A stretch of 54,705 nucleotides of DNA, from the NCBI GenBank assembly GCA_000320545.1, contig ADNK01001323.1, positions 1-54,705 of the forward strand. The letters run 5' to 3'. Within the stretch, counting starts at the first letter, position 1, and every line of letters starts with the position of its first letter. Below the pieces are notes generated by a model that saw nothing but the letters and a program-made list of their open reading frames with translations, was not told where the DNA came from and did not search any database. This DNA comes from Bigelowiella natans CCMP2755 (Eukaryota > Protista > Cercozoa). Position numbers and translations under genes: made by a program. Below are positions 2,770 through 46,300 of the stretch, piece after piece.

Positions 2770-3540
2770 TGCACCAATGACAGTGCACACTAACAATGCG
2801 CTTGCATCTTTCTTTGGAACATATGGAAAGAGCGTACTCATACATGCATTGCACACTTACATATAAATATTCTAGGCATATAAATTACTAAATTGTTGCT
2901 GTAGGTCATTGCTGCAACAACGCCGCTACGTACGCGAAAACGCGTAGCTAGCTGCCGTGTGCCCCCCTCCCACTTGAAAACAACATTAACAATAGTATCA
3001 TGTGCTCATTCAGCTTTGTATGCACATTCACAAAGGAGCTAGCATGCCACGGAGCAGTCGATATACATGCGCACACACAAACATATGTCCATGTGAAACG
3101 GATGCAATTAATATAAAGAAGCATCATTAAACTTGTTCAATTATCATCCCAATGTAGCTGTGAAATGTTGCAGCTACTACGTATTTAGCACTCAGATTGT
3201 GTATCATGCTTATTGAAAGTATTTCTGTCACATCAGAGGTGATATGTTTTCAGGAACAATCGATCATCCTGTAGTCTATCATTTACATGCTACTTTGGTC
3301 GTACATTGCATGCCTTTGTGACGTGCAATTCCATGAGCTATATCATGTGCATGTACATGACTAGATGACTGGCACAAACTAGCAAAGCGCTGGTGGCTGC
3401 ACTACATGCACACGCCTAGACATGTTGTGCTGTACATGTCTTAAATCAAAGCAAAACGCATGCGTACCAAAATGTGTGATCAAAGAGCAGGTGTTCTAAA
3501 TAATGAGATAGCTCTTAGTCACATGCGTGTGCGAGAGCTT
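2770..3540. repeat. Palindrome-dense block 1 (convergent junction)
   Basis: Runs such as GCTACGTACGCGAAAACGCGTAGCTAGC, CATGTGCATGTACATG and ACATGCGTGTGC lie between the + gene stop at 2715 and the - gene stop at 3693. Confidence 0.7.
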
Positions 3541-3692
3541 TGGACACGAGATCAGCACATACAAAATGGTGATATATGCACACATCGCTATGCATCTGCG
3601 CGATTAGTTTAAAGGGTGCGGATGGTTGTTTCGTCACTTTAATTAATAAGTATGAAGGATGCCCCTGTATCCAATAAGAACTGGAAGTATGA

Positions 3693-6237
3693 CTAAAACC
3701 ATACAAGTTTCTCCCCTCCTTCCTCCTCATCATATTTGTCCAAATATAATTTACTTTTCGCAGTCGGATCGTTAATATATTCTTCGAGACGAGGCAATAC
3801 CTTCTGGAATATCTTCCGCAGAACGAGAACCTAGTGATAGAAGCAATAAGCAAGCAACTTTTGCGGTGCGACATCCATAGTATGTACACGTCAATTGATG
3901 AGCACCATTATCAGCTGTATTCGGATGACTACTACTAATTCCCTCCTCCTCCTCCTCCTCCTCCTCCTCCTCCTCCTTGTATTCTGTCATCACAATCTGC
4001 AGATATATTCTTTCTGGGAAAGAAACACGCACTGACTGACATTGTTGTGGTAGCTCATCAATGCTGCCTCTCGTGCTGGGCCTTCATCGTGCGCCTCTAC
4101 AATACTTCTTTCCCATTCCTAGATCAAAGTTGTGGTAGGGAATGAGCTCATGAGATTGCAGCAGTAGCAGCTAAGAATATGGTCACGGTGGTCAAATGAA
4201 AAGCGTTGCTGCTGATCGGATCATTGTTTGTGCAAAAGTTGGATTTTAGCCCCCACCTGGGACAGCATAGCTTTGGCAAGCAGCCGTCTGCACAATGGAT
4301 GCATGAAAGACTTGAACGATGCCTTAAAGAGATGCATGTTGTTAGAGCTGATGGATATAAAAGATGACACAATAGACGACAAACGTTATCAATTTAACAA
4401 TAGGTCTTTCGACTCGCTTCTTCTTTTTCTTCTTCCTCTTCGTCTTTTAACTGTCGTAATGAGCATAGAATACAACCATATCTCCCTGGGCTATAAGACT
4501 GCGAACAGCGTCCTTCTCCATTTTCCTTGCCTCATCTTTCTTAACCGTGGAGGTGATAGAGCGTGAGATCCAAACAGTAAGGCATTGCCTTTCCGTTGCA
4601 ATTGATGGCGTAACGCGGTGCGGCATATGTGCAGAGCTGAACATAACCAATCTTCCAAAAATAGGTTCGATCTAGGAAAAGACAGGACAAGAGAGAGTTT
4701 AGAGGAGAGGAGGAGGATGAGAAACAGGTCAAATGGGAAGCCATACACTCCAGTTTCAATTCCCCATCCTGCATTTATCTTTATATTTTTAAGTACATGC
4801 GAAGAACCTCTACTTTCTCGTACGGCCATGGATACCTAAAAAATGCATACTATTCATCGTCGTTACTGCAGGCTACAAAGACGCATGTTGTCATGATCAA
4901 ACATATTCTCACAGTGTCGGTGTTGGTATGGCTGGGACTATCAACTACATTAATATCGTGATCAGATTCTGTAATTATTAATACAGTGTGATGTGCCCTC
5001 CGTGAGAGGGTTCCCATTGCTCGTTGAGATATAAGATCGCTGTCACCGCCCTCCCGTCTAGTCCCTTACAATATATGTTAGGTTATCAGGTAATTGTAGG
5101 AAAGGCGAAGAAAATCTTTGACACTAGTTCTGTCATGGTTTGTCTATATTAAATGGGTGTTTGGATCTGCTGTCCGACGCGTCTAATGCTGCTAAAACTT
5201 AACGACCGACGACAACGATCATCTAGATTATTATAGTGTTATTAATTCTGTGCGCAACAAAGAATCCTTCATCGAACAACCGGATCTGTATCAAAATGTA
5301 TGGGGAAGCAGCCCCCAGACCCTGCGTTGTGCTGCACTTTAAGAGTCTAAGGTAAATAACACAAACACACACACACACACACACACACACACACAATATA
5401 TATATATATATATATATATATATATATATATACTAAAATATATTATATCACGTGACTGCACAGGAGGAGTTTTCATGACAAATAAAAATGGCAGAATTTC
5501 AGGGACAAGGATGAAAAAATGGGAGAAGAGTCCGTTATGATCATTATCGTCATCATAATAAACACAATTTCATCCATGGTGGAAGAAGGGTATGATACTT
5601 ACTTGAGACTCAAGATCTAAACCAGGGATATGCTCGTTGAGACAATCGACAAGAGACGTGTCCTTGTGAAGCACATCGATTGTCGGGATAATGTCAACGT
5701 GCTTTTCCCATAAAGGGTGCATGGTGTCCCTGTTATGTAAATTGCACGTGGGTGTAACAAGAGCGATACGGTTTCAATTGTTGCTTCGCTTGCTTACTAC
5801 CATTCGAAAATTTGAGACTTCTCCAGATAGTGAGTATTACCGTCACGCGAAACAATATGGGTAGCATTTTTGTACATAACATTCCCAGATTTGAGTGTTT
5901 GTATCTCTGCCTTGAGCCCTTTGGCCACTGACGGCTCTACGACACCATCGACCACGGCGTAACCAAGCTGACGAAGCGACTTGGCTACCCTCCCCATCTG
6001 TTGCATGCCAATTCTCCACATGGAGTGTTCTCCTCCTCCTCCTCCTCCTCCTCCTCCTCCTCGATCAAACCCCCCCCTCCTGAACGATGTGGGCACAAGG
6101 TGGTTGTCGTCAACCGTTTGAGCGTCGTTGTCGTCGCAGTCGTTAGTTACTCCCACGTTGATCCTGACTGCAGTGGTAATTTTCGGCTTTAATAAAAGCC
6201 TAATCGTGACAACAAGTGCACAACAACAATGACACAA
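3693..6237 (-). CDS. 2OG-Fe(II) dioxygenase, prolyl-hydroxylase (EGLN/SM-20-like) family, multi-exon; start uncertain (may extend to ~6600)
   Basis: Minus-strand exons give LRQLGYAVVDGVV (~5950), GGCFPIHFDTDP (HxD, ~5280-5315), DGRAVTAILYLNEQWEPSHGG (~5000-5060), IEPIFGRLVMFSSAHMPHRVTP (distal His, ~4610-4675) and a C-terminal EWERSIVEAHDEGPARE segment. A likely last exon ends at TAG 3693-3695. Confidence 0.85.
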
Positions 6238-45105: not shown

Positions 45106-45229
45106 GACATTCATTGTATTTTCATAATCATGTACCTAATAAAAGCATTGATGCTCGCTAAAGCAGGACCGGGAGCAATATAGCGGGAAGCTGTGCTTAT
45201 ACCTACGTATGTACGTATCCGCTTTTGAT

Positions 45230-46300
45230 AGGTAGCTCATTCTTGTGCTTATTATTAACTAGTTGAGTATATGCTAATAGATTTCACTGCCATGCCTTTG
45301 TACATGAAGTGCAAGCATGCGTGTCTCTTAAGGTGTAGTGTAGCTATGCAATGCTGTCGCTATGGTGCTTATGCTTTATCCATTTCCCCCCATTATATAT
45401 TATATGCCTATTCATGCAGCGAAAGCATTCGTCTAGTTCGTGTATGTCGCTCCGCATGTGTCGTGCAGCTGCTAGCTAGCTATGTGTGACGTCGACTGAT
45501 CAAGCCTAGAAGCGGTCATAAGTCATAATGCCACATTTGCACTCTTTCAATAGGCCTCCCAATGTAGCTGCACTAGTGCAGCTACGTACATTCATGTGAA
45601 CACATATCTAGACGCACTAGCTAGTGCGCTGCACACAAGCTACATAGAGACATGCTAGCATGTGTCCCTATGTGCGTGTACATCGCTAGATCGTTTAGTG
45701 CTATATATGATATTACATGTCTATAATAGTGTGTCATTTGTTTCGCTGAAAATGGGCGGGGTTCATGTGTGGCAGATCATGTGATGCACCAAAAAGACAC
45801 ACATGAAGACCAGAAGACTTCGCTAGCATCGGTACATGTGTGTTTACGCGTACGTATGCACGCACGCACGTAGAGGCATGTCTCTACATAGCATAGCACA
45901 ACTAGACAAGCTAGCGCTGGAACTAGATGCGCGTAAATTCATGTCACACGTACACGCGCGCACATGCATGCGTGTCGATGCGTCTAGACGTGCTAGCGTG
46001 TACGTGTTTTGCTAGCGGGAGGATGTGCGCATCAAATAAGACTAAAAGATGTAAATGCATTGTGTATGGGAAGCAAGATGTCACATAGAGAGAGAGAGAG
46101 AGAGAGAGAGAGAGAGAGAGAGGGAGAGAGAAAGAGATCGCGTAAGCTTGTGGCAATACGTAACACGTAGAATAGACACACAAAGCATCCATGGTCTGCA
46201 CGAATATAGTTGCAAATATGTGTGACACACATGGTTCTTGACTATAGCAGTGATGGTGCGATAACAATATCACACATGCAACAAAAATCAAGATATAACG
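45230..46300. repeat. Palindrome-dense block 6 (convergent junction)
   Basis: GCAGCTGCTAGCTAGC, GCTGCACTAGTGCAGC, GCGTACGTATGCACGCACGC and ACGTGCTAGCGTGTACGT lie between stops at 45105 (+) and 46382 (-). Confidence 0.8.

What the first reader, a model, noticed from the sequence alone, without database searches (positions are those of the whole stretch)
2770..46300. Palindrome-dense DNA blocks mark every convergent gene junction
Seen: five clear convergent junctions (2715/3693, 8858/10191, 29429/30925, 38480/40055, 45105/46382) each contain a 0.7-1.3 kb block built from short palindromes (GCTAGC, TAGCTA, ATGCAT, CACGTG, TACGTA, TGTACA, GCGC). A sixth, shorter block follows the ADAT1 3' end. 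I saw no comparable blocks in introns or divergent promoters, which carry ordinary microsatellites. The blocks are not tandem repeats and do not align to each other by eye, so they share a composition rather than a sequence. Known: kinetoplastid convergent strand-switch regions carry base J for Pol II termination, and dinoflagellate chromosomal domain boundaries coincide with convergent gene arrays. Inference: these blocks may be an undescribed termination or boundary element, a landing pad for symmetric DNA modification, or the scar of repeated snap-back repair where polymerases collide.
Basis: partly seen in the sequence, partly recalled or inferred. Interest (0 to 1): 0.85.

Follow-up and report, generated by a model that had tools for sequence, protein, structure and literature searches.

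The report
Self-complementary spacer DNA behind gene ends
In the alga Bigelowiella natans, the DNA just past the end of genes (all five tail-to-tail gene junctions in this window, plus one tail-to-head spacer) forms a sharply bounded, strand-symmetric sequence class rich in words such as GCTAGC, CATG and TGCA; it probably helps stop transcription from both directions, and I found no description of it in the papers I could search.

Summary
The window is Bigelowiella natans nuclear DNA. A leave-one-out 4-mer score and a training-free purine/pyrimidine-alternation scan both pick out the same six regions: five convergent spacers and a ~210-bp patch after the ADAT1-like gene.

Refinements:
- **Only some palindromes are enriched.** CTAG, TGCA, CATG, GCGC, ACGT and GCTAGC (29 inside, 3 outside) are. 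GATC, TCGA, AATT, GGCC and CTGCAG are not.
- **Composition explains most of it.** The blocks show R/Y alternation of 0.60-0.76, excess GpC and CpA/TpG, few CC/GG, and no strand skew.
- **Some true palindromes remain.** Perfect palindromes of 12 nt or more, often centred on CTAG, and shared 12-18-nt motifs still exceed Markov nulls.
- **The cores lack microsatellites and fold strongly.** Predicted folding is -43 vs -29 kcal/mol per 150 nt.
- **A ~75-nt element recurs.** It has two conserved boxes and a hairpin and occurs six times, always sense to the upstream gene. Four independent transcript assemblies end at its first box.

The blocks start near the poly(A) site and fill the post-cleavage spacer. 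They track gene 3' ends, not convergence as such.

Best reading (inferred, ~0.4): a bidirectional termination zone. Rivals: neutral palindrome-generating drift, a DNA-level protein or topoisomerase pad, or decayed mini-elements. The scan noted the same blocks in other windows of this genome.

The parts
2800..3600 (.). Block 1 core, in the convergent spacer between a + gene (stop at 2715) and a - strand 2OG-Fe(II) oxygenase gene (terminal ORF ends at 3693)
   Evidence: Leave-one-out 4-mer score up to +86 per 200 nt. R/Y alternation up to 0.71. The - strand gene is supported by Pfam PF13640 on 4450-4671(-).
9400..10200 (.). Block 2 core, in the convergent spacer between a + strand EF-hand gene (stop at 8858) and a - strand hydrolase-like gene (stop at 10191). 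The left third of the spacer (8859-9400) is not block-like and holds (TC)n and (AT)n.
   Evidence: Score up to +104. Alternation 0.64-0.73. Pfam EF-hand matches on + strand exons and a weak Peptidase_S9/BD-FAE match on the - strand.
17230..17442 (.). Block 6, a short block after the 3' end of the ADAT1-like gene in a tail-to-head context. Its right edge is the 5' LTR of a retrotransposon.
   Evidence: Score +60 per 200 nt, although this region was never used for training. Recovered by the alternation scan.
29700..30700 (.). Block 3 core, the block richest in GCTAGC/CTAG (18 GCTAGC). It holds many perfect palindromes of 12-22 nt.
   Evidence: Score up to +124. GCTAGC positions. Palindromes listed. 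Local inverted and direct repeats both exceed the Markov-3 null.
38600..39400 (.). Block 4, left part. It starts at the poly(A) site of the + gene at 35536-38658.
   Evidence: Score up to +85. Transcript L001 aligns at 99.96% identity and ends at 38658.
39600..40000 (.). Block 4, right part, next to the 3' end of the - gene (stop at 40055). A GC-rich stretch at 39400-39600 that is not block-like separates it from the left part.
   Evidence: Score up to +74, with a trough of -67 at 39401-39600. The - gene is confirmed by mapping the 769-aa ortholog P0006 to 43216-40091.
45300..46100 (.). Block 5 core, in the convergent spacer between a + ORF (stop at 45105) and a - ORF (stop at 46382)
   Evidence: Score up to +113. 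Seven GCTAGC. Palindromes of 14-22 nt.
38642..38721 (+). Element copy: box 1 (GAGACGGATTTAATGAAG), box 2 (TTCAATTGTCATCC) and a hairpin region. Transcripts end inside or just after box 1.
   Evidence: nhmmer E=5.5e-18. Alignments A1 and A2. Transcript ends.
38650..38665 (+). Inferred cleavage/poly(A) zone of the + gene
   Evidence: Three of the four MMETSP/JGI assemblies (L001-L003) end at ...GAGACGGA...GGATTTAAT and ...TAATGAAGTGG. L004 stops earlier, and none reaches box 2. No poly(A) tails are kept in the assemblies, so the precision is about 8 nt either way.
39019..39100 (+). Element copy 2 in junction 4
   Evidence: nhmmer E=1.7e-17
39100..39184 (+). Element copy 3 in junction 4, directly adjacent to copy 2. 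Its hairpin GUGGCUG...CGGCCAC carries a compensatory G-C where the other copies have A-U.
   Evidence: nhmmer E=1.1e-17. Fold.
9844..9925 (-). Element copy in junction 2, sense to the - gene whose stop lies 266 nt upstream
   Evidence: nhmmer E=2.4e-21. Hairpin fold.
3092..3177 (+). Element copy in junction 1, sense to the + gene, 377 nt after its stop
   Evidence: nhmmer E=3.4e-17. 10-bp hairpin GUAGCUGUGA/UUGCAGCUAC.
45508..45585 (+). Degenerate element copy in junction 5. Box 1 is weak; box 2 and the hairpin are clear. The hairpin is a 22-nt perfect palindrome, GTAGCTGCACTAGTGCAGCTAC.
   Evidence: nhmmer E=1.9e-14. Fold z=-3.2. Palindrome list.

Best explanation
Shown: these blocks are the post-poly(A) spacer DNA of Bigelowiella natans genes.
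- They form a discrete sequence class free of microsatellites and symmetric between the two strands.
- The class starts around the cleavage/poly(A) site, 100-400 nt after the stop codon.
- It fills the space up to the next gene's 3' end in convergent pairs, or about 200 nt in the one tail-to-head spacer.
- Purines and pyrimidines alternate, GpC and CpA/TpG are in excess, and CC/GG is rare.
- The vocabulary is small and self-complementary: CATG, TGCA, GCATGC, GCTAGC, ACGT.
- As a result, either strand, as nascent RNA or as unwound DNA, can pair extensively with itself.

Inferred: the blocks work as bidirectional termination zones.
- Polymerases that pass the poly(A) site from either side transcribe hairpin-prone sequence that favours pausing, cleavage or release.
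- This would keep convergent polymerases and read-through transcripts out of the neighbouring gene.
- A ~75-nt module sits at the entrance of four blocks: box 1 at the cleavage site, then box 2, then a hairpin. It looks like a 3'-end processing and termination signal.

The short palindromes are largely a consequence of this composition, not the selected unit. The link is with gene 3' ends, not with convergence itself.
For: Discreteness and cross-validation:
- The leave-one-out 4-mer score is positive only in the six regions, and the untrained alternation scan agrees.

Position:
- The score rises from -8 (0-100 nt after the stop) to about +35 (300 nt or more).
- Transcript L001 aligns at 99.96% identity and has a 178-nt 3' UTR.
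- Three of four independent assemblies end within about 8 nt of box 1, the fourth stops earlier, and none reaches box 2.
- The 3' UTRs of mature transcripts are only weakly block-like.

Strand symmetry:
- Skews are near zero.
- Words show no sense/antisense asymmetry apart from (CT)n.

Self-complementarity:
- Mean MFE is -43 vs -29 kcal/mol per 150 nt. After GC correction the blocks are 10.7 kcal/mol more stable (p=4e-30).
- Mean z against dinucleotide shuffles is -0.92, against +0.08 in controls (p=0.001).

The ~75-nt element:
- It has six copies in four junctions, all sense to the gene whose stop lies 162-403 nt upstream.
- A hairpin follows box 2 in at least four of the six copies, and there is one compensatory pair change.
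- Junction 4 has three successive copies.

Other:
- The tail-to-head spacer also has a block.
- Introns, exons and promoters carry 1.9 microsatellites per kb. The block cores hold 1 where 9.3 are expected.

Precedent: yeast bidirectional termination zones are built on the palindromic UAUAUA element and serve both convergent and tandem genes (bioRxiv 10.1101/2022.11.02.514956).
Against: - Function is not shown. There are no run-on, 3'-end or read-through data.
- Transcript evidence covers one gene only.
- Most of the folding stability comes from dinucleotide composition: shuffled sequences give -39.9 vs -43.2 kcal/mol.
- Palindromes of 6 and 8 nt match a Markov-3 null, so there is no strong signal of selection for particular hairpins.
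- Word content differs a lot between blocks (GCTAGC counts are 18, 7, 2, 1, 1). That looks like local drift or amplification rather than one conserved signal.
- The element is found on only one side of four junctions and is absent from junction 3.
- The blocks are 0.4-1 kb long, far more than the ~120 bp of the yeast zones.
- The lack of sense-strand asymmetry fits a DNA-level or purely mutational origin equally well.
Confidence: 0.42

Rival explanations
1. Neutral by-product. The post-poly(A) spacers are the only DNA in this compact genome that is neither transcribed nor part of a promoter. They therefore drift freely. Slippage and intra- or inter-strand template switching (quasi-palindrome correction, fold-back repair at polymerase or fork collisions) amplify short self-complementary motifs. 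The result is 'cryptically simple' palindromic DNA with no function of its own.
For: - Each block has its own word flavour: GCTAGC counts are 18, 7, 2, 1, 1 while CATG and TGCA are more even.
- Local direct and inverted 8-mers are both in excess in blocks 3 and 4.
- Perfect palindromes of 12 nt or more number 17, against 4.8 (Markov-3) and 9.0 (Markov-5) expected. Many are nested or centred on CTAG, as local inverted duplication would produce.
- (GCTA)n-like runs occur at 30148-30165.
- There is no sense-strand asymmetry.
- A young LTR element sits at a block edge, consistent with a safe haven for insertions.
Against: - The same composition recurs in every block under leave-one-out testing, and blocks share specific 12-18-nt motifs beyond a Markov-3 null (41 vs 11.7).
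- Di- and trinucleotide microsatellites, the commonest slippage products elsewhere in the window, are nearly absent from the cores.
- Blocks 1 and 2 show no excess of local repeats.
- Block borders are sharp and tied to the poly(A) site.
- The long SSR-rich stretch at 47-54.7 kb shows no clear genes yet does not adopt this composition.
Confidence: 0.27
2. DNA-level landing pad. The alternating purine/pyrimidine, dyad-symmetric words are preferred sites for a two-fold symmetric protein acting on duplex DNA. Candidates are topoisomerase II relieving the positive supercoils that pile up between converging polymerases, a dimeric DNA-binding or boundary factor, or a methyltransferase with palindromic targets.
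For: - Composition is strictly strand-symmetric.
- R/Y alternation is 0.60-0.76 with period-2 autocorrelation out to about 16 nt.
- Particular 6-mers are strongly enriched per base: GCTAGC about 76x and GCATGC about 19x.
[quoted passage not shown] This is Spitzner, Chung and Muller 1990, seen only as an entry in the reference list of PMC1920260; I did not read the paper.
- Convergent Pol II units in yeast need topoisomerases I and II (PMC3273821).
- Bacterial REP elements at convergent 3' ends are a functional analogue (my own knowledge, and the bioRxiv 10.64898/2026.03.23.713779 abstract).
Against: - There is no protein, ChIP or modification data.
- No single site is shared evenly by all blocks.
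- A tail-to-head spacer, where supercoils of opposite sign would meet, also has a block.
- There is no 10-bp periodicity that would suggest nucleosome positioning.
Confidence: 0.15
3. Decayed mobile mini-elements. The blocks are piles of short palindromic mobile elements (MITE-like or REP-like, including the ~75-nt element) that accumulate where insertion does least harm, and then decay.
For: - The ~75-nt element has six copies at 61% mean column identity (alignment A2), two of them in direct tandem.
- Several 12-18-nt motifs recur in both orientations in different blocks.
- An LTR retrotransposon has also landed at a block edge.
Against: - The blocks do not align beyond these short pieces.
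- I saw no terminal inverted repeats or target-site duplications around the element.
- All six element copies are sense to the upstream gene, which random insertion would not give (about 1 in 16 for the four junctions).
- Transcripts end at box 1.
- nhmmer finds no further copies, even in relaxed searches.
Confidence: 0.1
4. Product of the TpA-to-CpA/TpG hypermutation already described in B. natans, acting on once AT-rich 3' spacers.
For: - rho(CpA+TpG) is 1.66 in the blocks, above the 1.52 cut-off used by Mettrop et al. (bioRxiv 10.64898/2026.01.13.699255; my values).
- TATA edited on both strands would give TGCA or CATG and would create GpC.
Against: - rho(TpA) is 0.89 in the blocks and 0.86 elsewhere, far from the 0.43 or lower of the hypermutated regions.
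- CpG is not depleted (0.88).
- CTAG and GCTAGC cannot be produced this way.
Confidence: 0.02

Closest known systems
Yeast bidirectional termination zones built on the palindromic UAUAUA efficiency element (bioRxiv 10.1101/2022.11.02.514956)
   Same: - They lie at gene 3' ends in a compact genome.
- They serve convergent and tandem genes alike.
- The core motifs are palindromic, alternating pyrimidine-purine hexamers that read the same on both strands.
   Different: - The yeast zones are about 120 bp, AU-rich and overlap the 3' UTRs.
- Here the zones are 0.2-1 kb, 46% GC, lie mostly beyond the poly(A) site, and use CATG, TGCA, GCATGC and GCTAGC.
- Nucleosome depletion and use of antisense poly(A) sites have not been tested here.
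Mimivirus 'hairpin rule' for transcript 3' ends (Byrne et al. 2009; from memory, not checked here)
   Same: Palindromic, hairpin-forming sequence in intergenic DNA defines where transcripts end, in either orientation.
   Different: - It is a viral system with AT-rich hairpins located exactly at the poly(A) site.
- Here the conserved hairpin lies about 45-50 nt downstream of the transcript end, and the palindrome-rich tract runs on for hundreds of bases.
Bacterial REP/BIME repetitive extragenic palindromes (my own knowledge, plus the bioRxiv 10.64898/2026.03.23.713779 abstract)
   Same: - They are short palindromic units concentrated in extragenic DNA at 3' ends, often between convergent genes.
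- Proposed roles are in termination, mRNA 3' ends and supercoil management.
   Different: - REPs are a recognisable family with a consensus and a dedicated transposase.
- Here there is a shared composition plus a loose motif vocabulary, in a eukaryotic nucleus.
Kinetoplastid convergent strand-switch regions marked by base J
   Same: A special state of the DNA at places where Pol II transcription must stop.
   Different: - Base J is a chemical modification at polycistron ends and has no known sequence class like this one.
- Modification cannot be read from this sequence.
TpA-targeted hypermutation of viral inserts in B. natans (bioRxiv 10.64898/2026.01.13.699255)
   Same: It occurs in the same organism and involves regional CpA/TpG enrichment.
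   Different: The blocks are not TpA-depleted, so a defining feature is tested and not met.

Membership tests
Bidirectional termination zone (yeast type) | Located at 3' ends of both convergent and tandem genes, absent from head-to-head spacers | tested here: met
   There are five convergent spacers and one tail-to-head spacer. No block occurs elsewhere in the window.
Bidirectional termination zone (yeast type) | Cleavage/poly(A) sites of sense and antisense transcripts fall within the zone | tested here: inconclusive
   One gene's transcripts end at the block edge. I could not obtain transcripts for the opposing genes.
Bidirectional termination zone (yeast type) | Palindromic (strand-symmetric) core motif | tested here: met
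   CATG, TGCA, GCATGC and GCTAGC are enriched, and there is no sense/antisense asymmetry. The motifs differ from UAUAUA.
Bidirectional termination zone (yeast type) | About 120 bp wide and nucleosome-depleted | tested here: not met
   The width here is 0.2-1.0 kb. Nucleosome occupancy cannot be tested with these tools.
Mimivirus hairpin rule | Transcript 3' end coincides with a long hairpin-forming palindrome | tested here: not met
   Transcripts end at box 1. The conserved hairpin starts about 45-50 nt further downstream.
REP-like or MITE-like repeated element family | Copies align to one consensus over their whole length | tested here: not met
   Block-against-block blastn finds only microsatellites and the ~75-nt element. 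nhmmer finds six element copies and no more.
REP-like or MITE-like repeated element family | Terminal inverted repeats and target-site duplications | tested here: inconclusive
   I saw none around the six element copies. With six diverged copies this is weak evidence.
Microsatellite / tandem repeat | Head-to-tail copies of a unit | tested here: not met
   TRF reports only short arrays inside the cores: (AGCTAGCA)5 at 30151-30194, its overlapping 20-nt-period call, and a 15-mer x3. (AG)25 sits at the edge of block 5 (46087-46137). Perfect SSRs number 1 against 9.3 expected.
TpA hypermutated region (Mettrop et al. 2026) | rho(TpA) of 0.43 or less | tested here: not met
   rho(TpA) is 0.89 in the blocks. 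Threshold taken.
TpA hypermutated region (Mettrop et al. 2026) | rho(CpA+TpG) of 1.52 or more | tested here: met
   The value is 1.66.
Base-J or other modified termination region | Chemically modified bases at the site | not testable with these tools
   Needs long-read modification calls or immunoprecipitation.

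The most novel reading that the evidence does not exclude
B. natans, and perhaps chlorarachniophytes in general, has evolved a dedicated kilobase-scale class of terminator DNA. 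Its entrance is a modular 3'-end signal (box 1 at the cleavage site, box 2, then a hairpin). Behind it lies a strand-symmetric, hairpin- and cruciform-prone tract built from a small palindromic vocabulary (GCTAGC, GCATGC, CATG, TGCA). This tract stops Pol II from either direction and/or recruits a dyad-symmetric enzyme such as topoisomerase II. It would be a nuclear, eukaryotic counterpart of bacterial REP elements and of the viral hairpin rule, and would be visible directly in the sequence at essentially every gene 3' end.
Probability: 0.3. Interest if true: 0.8.

Novelty: new variant of a known kind. Interest (0 to 1): 0.66.

Why it matters
How RNA polymerase II is stopped between closely packed genes is poorly understood outside yeast and mammals, and almost nothing is known for Rhizaria.

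Here the place where transcription must end can be read straight from the DNA. It is a sharply bounded sequence class with a candidate processing module at its entrance.

- If the blocks are functional, they give a ready-made bidirectional terminator for engineering this alga. They also give a simple rule for annotating gene ends, and a natural system for testing whether self-complementary DNA or RNA, topoisomerase sites or DNA modification drives termination.
- If they are not functional, they mark a strong, localised, palindrome-generating mutational process. That would be of interest for genome stability, in an organism already known for region-specific hypermutation.

Tried and rejected
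- **Metagenome scan for box 1 (TGAGACGGATNTAAT).** None carries the extended element.
- **Homology searches for two more flanking genes.** They found nothing. The length window excludes the 769-aa ortholog that the representative search later found.
- **Exact look-ups of three ORFs.** Two were spurious ORFs in 3' UTRs and one was the 376-aa ORF itself. I hoped to fetch more transcripts, but none is on record.
- **Codon-usage and splice-donor strand maps.** They were too noisy, or contaminated by microsatellites, to give gene models.
- **Rfam and tRNA scans.** They found nothing in or near the blocks. The only hit is a chance mir-297 match to a CA/TG-rich stretch.
- **Nucleosome-type 10-bp periodicity.** Absent.
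- **Sense-strand RNA motifs.** There is no asymmetry except (CT)n.
- **TpA hypermutation as the cause.** Rejected, because TpA is not depleted.
- **One decayed transposon family.** Rejected as a whole-block explanation.
- **Extra alternation hits at 47-50.5 kb.** These are (CAT)n, (AC)n and (TA)n debris, not blocks.
- **Literature.** Searches on Bigelowiella combined with polyadenylation, palindromic, DNA methylation and terminator found no description of these blocks. The 2012 genome paper is not in the searchable library.

Full report
**Origin of the window.** The ORF at 36129-38480(+) matches MMETSP/JGI proteins of Bigelowiella natans at 97-100% identity. The 2717-nt transcript contig L001 aligns to the window at 99.96% identity as five exons: 35536-35576, 35655-35795, 35955-35992, 36079-36143 and 36214-38658. 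The window is therefore nuclear DNA of this chlorarachniophyte alga. It is gene-dense and intron-rich. It also carries an extraordinary load of microsatellites: 108 TRF rows and 106 perfect SSRs of 18 bp or more, about 1.9 per kb.

**Checking the observation.**
- Raw counts of palindromic 4-, 6- and 8-mers peak at the five stated junctions, but also at every (AT)n run.
- After masking SSRs, palindromic 4-mers occupy 10.0% of block positions and 5.1% elsewhere.
- I built a strand-symmetrised 4-mer log-likelihood score (blocks against the rest) and scored each block with a model trained on the other four. Per 200 nt, the score is negative (typically -30 to -90) almost everywhere.
- It exceeds +20 only at 2800-3600, 9400-10200, 29700-30700, 38600-39400, 39600-40000, 45300-46100 and 17100-17600. 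The last region, after the ADAT1-like gene, was never used in training.
- A scan that needs no training, purine/pyrimidine alternation of 0.60 or more in 300-nt windows, recovers the same six regions. Its few weaker hits are imperfect (CAT)n, (AC)n and (TA)n.
- The blocks are therefore real, discrete, and share a cross-validated composition. Introns (including the four introns of the transcript-supported gene), exons and head-to-head spacers do not have it.

**What the composition is.**
- Not all palindromes are enriched. Block-versus-rest ratios are CTAG 5.5, GCGC 5.1, CGCG 4.6, TGCA 4.0, CATG 3.9, ACGT 2.8, AGCT 2.4 and GTAC 1.4.
- TATA, GATC, ATAT, TTAA, AATT and TCGA sit at 0.7-0.9, and GGCC and CCGG at 0.5.
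- Among hexamers, GCTAGC occurs 29 times in the spacers and 3 times outside, and GCATGC 22 against 9. CTGCAG (1 vs 19), GAGCTC, TTCGAA, GGATCC, GAATTC and AAGCTT are not enriched.
- Non-palindromic words such as GCTA, GCAC, ATGC, ACGC and CACG are enriched as strongly.
- At the dinucleotide level, rho(GpC) is 1.75, rho(CpA+TpG) 1.66 and rho(CC+GG) 0.41. GA/TC and AA/TT are low, and rho(TpA) is 0.89, the same as elsewhere.
- Purine/pyrimidine alternation is 0.60-0.76, against 0.50 for the window. AT and GC skews are near zero.
- Autocorrelation shows period 2 (out to about 16 nt) and a weak period 4, but no 10-bp signal.

**How much is 'palindrome' beyond composition?**
- Against dinucleotide shuffles, 4-mer palindromes are modestly in excess (z of 3-4 in four of five blocks).
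- Against a strand-symmetric Markov-3 model, 6- and 8-mer palindromes are as expected.
- Longer perfect palindromes are in real excess. Those of 12 nt or more number 17, against 4.8 (Markov-3, 0 of 200 simulations) and 9.0 (Markov-5, 1 of 200). Those of 14 nt or more number 10, against 1.6 and 3.2.
- Many are centred on CTAG: CATG-CTAG-CATG, GTAGCTGCA-CTAG-TGCAGCTAC and CGCA-CTAGCTAG-TGCG. They cluster in junctions 3 and 5.
- Local 8-mer inverted repeats are in excess in blocks 3 and 5. Direct repeats are in excess in blocks 3 and 4.
- Word usage differs between blocks. GCTAGC counts are 18, 7, 2, 1 and 1, while CATG and TGCA are more even.

**Self-complementarity.**
- Mean MFE per 150 nt is -43 kcal/mol in the blocks and -29 to -30 elsewhere, on both strands. 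After GC correction the difference is -10.7 kcal/mol (p=4e-30).
- Most of this is compositional. Shuffled block sequences give -39.9. The order-dependent remainder is z=-0.92, against +0.08 in controls (p=0.001).

**Shared sequence.**
- Whole blocks do not align. They are not sequence-free, however.
- A ~75-nt element occurs six times: 3092-3177(+), 9844-9925(-), 38642-38721(+), 39019-39100(+), 39100-39184(+) and 45508-45585(+).
- It consists of box 1 (GAGACGGAT[G/T]TAATGAA), a spacer, box 2 (TTCAATnnTCATCC), and a hairpin based on GUAGCUG...CAGCUAC. One copy has GUGGCUG...CGGCCAC, a compensatory change.
- Every copy is sense to the gene whose stop codon lies 162-403 nt upstream.
- Three of four independent transcriptome assemblies of the 35536-38658 gene end at ...GAGACGGA...GGATTTAAT and ...TAATGAAGTGG. 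The fourth stops earlier, and none reaches box 2. Box 1 therefore sits at the cleavage/poly(A) site, to within about 8 nt. Poly(A) tails are not retained in the assemblies.
- Blocks share more 12-mers than a Markov-3 model predicts (41 vs 11.7, maximum 21). Examples are GTAGTTGCATGGCTACAC, GACGTGCTAGCGTGT, CTGTCTAGCTGTGCA and CATGCTAGCATG, in either orientation.

**Position relative to genes.**
- I oriented each half-spacer in the sense of its gene. The block score rises from -8 (0-100 nt after the stop) through +9 and +15 to about +35 from 300 nt onward.
- The 178-nt 3' UTR of the transcript-supported gene is only weakly block-like. The block starts at about 38600, and the transcript ends at 38658.
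- The blocks are thus mainly the DNA beyond the poly(A) sites, plus distal UTR.
- There is no sense/antisense asymmetry of words apart from two (CT)n runs. This argues against a simple sense-strand RNA-binding motif.
- Junction 4 is confirmed as convergent by the transcript and by mapping the 769-aa ortholog P0006 to 43216-40091 on the minus strand.
- Junctions 1 and 2 are supported by Pfam matches to exons: 2OG-Fe(II) oxygenase on the minus strand, EF-hands on the plus strand, and a weak hydrolase match on the minus strand.
- Junctions 3 and 5 rest on terminal ORFs.
- The sixth block (17230-17442) follows the ADAT1-like gene (A_deamin domain) in a tail-to-head context. On its right it is cut by a very young gypsy-type LTR retrotransposon at 17443-22093, with identical 326-bp LTRs and a GATT target duplication. 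Beyond the retrotransposon the sequence is not block-like. The association is therefore with 3' ends, not with convergence.

**Interpretation.**
- Shown: this is a discrete, strand-symmetric, self-complementary, SSR-poor sequence class that starts near poly(A) sites and fills 3' spacers. It has a recurrent oriented module at its entrance.
- Inferred, at about 0.4: it is a bidirectional termination zone.
- The nearest precedent is the yeast zones built on the palindromic, alternating pyrimidine-purine UAUAUA element. They serve convergent and tandem genes, but are about 120 bp, AU-rich and lie within UTRs.
- Rival 1, at about 0.27: a purely mutational origin, that is, cryptic simplicity plus palindrome-perfecting template switching in the only unconstrained DNA. 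The block-specific word flavours and the long palindromes favour it. The shared motifs, the lack of ordinary SSRs and the sharp borders tied to poly(A) sites count against it.
- Rival 2, at about 0.15: a duplex-DNA landing pad. Topoisomerase II prefers alternating purine-pyrimidine repeats. This is Spitzner et al. 1990, seen only as an entry in a reference list. Convergent units in yeast need topoisomerases. A dimeric factor or a methyltransferase are the other candidates.
- Rival 3, at about 0.1: piles of decayed mini-elements.
- The TpA-to-CpA/TpG hypermutation recently described in this species (bioRxiv 10.64898/2026.01.13.699255) does not explain the blocks, because TpA is not depleted.

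**Novelty.** Four literature searches on Bigelowiella found no description of these blocks or of the nuclear poly(A) signal. The 2012 genome paper could not be searched. First-stage notes from many other windows of this genome describe the same blocks, and also a GACGGATGTA element. Those notes are unchecked. If they are right, the feature is genome-wide. I class it as a new variant of a known kind (a bidirectional 3' termination zone), with function still unproven.

**Limits.** The analysis covers one window. Transcripts are available for one flanking gene only, and I built no full gene models. There are no expression, chromatin or modification data.

Noticed in passing
window 17443-22093: An intact gypsy-type LTR retrotransposon with a 1302-aa Gag-Pol ORF (RT, RNase H and integrase zinc-binding domains). 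Its 326-bp LTRs are 100% identical (TG...CA) and it has a 4-bp target duplication, GATT. It is inserted exactly at the distal edge of block 6. It is not TpA-depleted (rho TpA 1.14), so the species' TpA hypermutation has not yet touched it.
   Followed up: partly
window 3092-3177, 9844-9925, 38642-38721, 39019-39184, 45508-45585: A ~75-nt oriented module (box 1 GAGACGGATGTAATGAA, box 2 TTCAATGGTCATCC, then a hairpin) at the cleavage site of at least one gene. It is a candidate nuclear 3'-end processing signal of B. natans. A similar GAGACGATG...TGCAATG...ATGAACG string lies in the 3' UTR of the ortholog in another MMETSP transcriptome sample (3300017173), presumably a related species (L125).
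   Followed up: partly
window 29441-29571: A compound microsatellite, (AC)16(AT)19(GT)16, forms a ~130-nt quasi-palindrome starting 12 nt after the stop codon of the + gene at junction 3. Similar (AC)n(AT)n compounds occur at 5359-5448, 11896-11971 and 50344-50480.
   Followed up: no
window 39400-39600: A GC-rich (~52%) stretch that is not block-like splits the junction 4 spacer in two. Rfam, tRNA and ORF searches give no match. It may be the boundary between the two genes' zones, or an unrecognised small feature.
   Followed up: partly
whole window: Microsatellite density is extreme, at about 1.9 perfect SSRs of 18 bp or more per kb. Seventy are trinucleotide repeats and many lie inside ORFs. 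The block cores hold only 1 where 9.3 are expected.
   Followed up: yes
window 8902-8947 and 46087-46137: Two long (CT)n runs lie 45-295 nt downstream of stop codons, and both read as CT in the sense of their gene. With only two cases this may be chance.
   Followed up: no
window 14084-15082 (and further exons to about 17000): An ADAT1/ADAR-type adenosine deaminase gene (Pfam A_deamin, E=4e-19). The preprint on TpA hypermutation looked for ADAT2/ADAT3-type deaminases as candidate editors. Whether this ADAR-like protein was considered is not stated in the part I read.
   Followed up: no
literature, PMC13196603: Giant viruses (ChlorV) that infect B. natans methylate TGCA (6mA) and RCGY (5mC). 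Both are among the words enriched in the blocks. This is probably coincidence, but worth a look once modification data exist.
   Followed up: no
window 9538-9555 (+) and 40002-40019 (-): The identical 18-mer GTAGTTGCATGGCTACAC occurs in two different spacers. In junction 4 it lies 36-53 nt downstream of the - gene's stop, in that gene's sense. It is one of several 12-18-nt motifs shared between blocks.
   Followed up: partly
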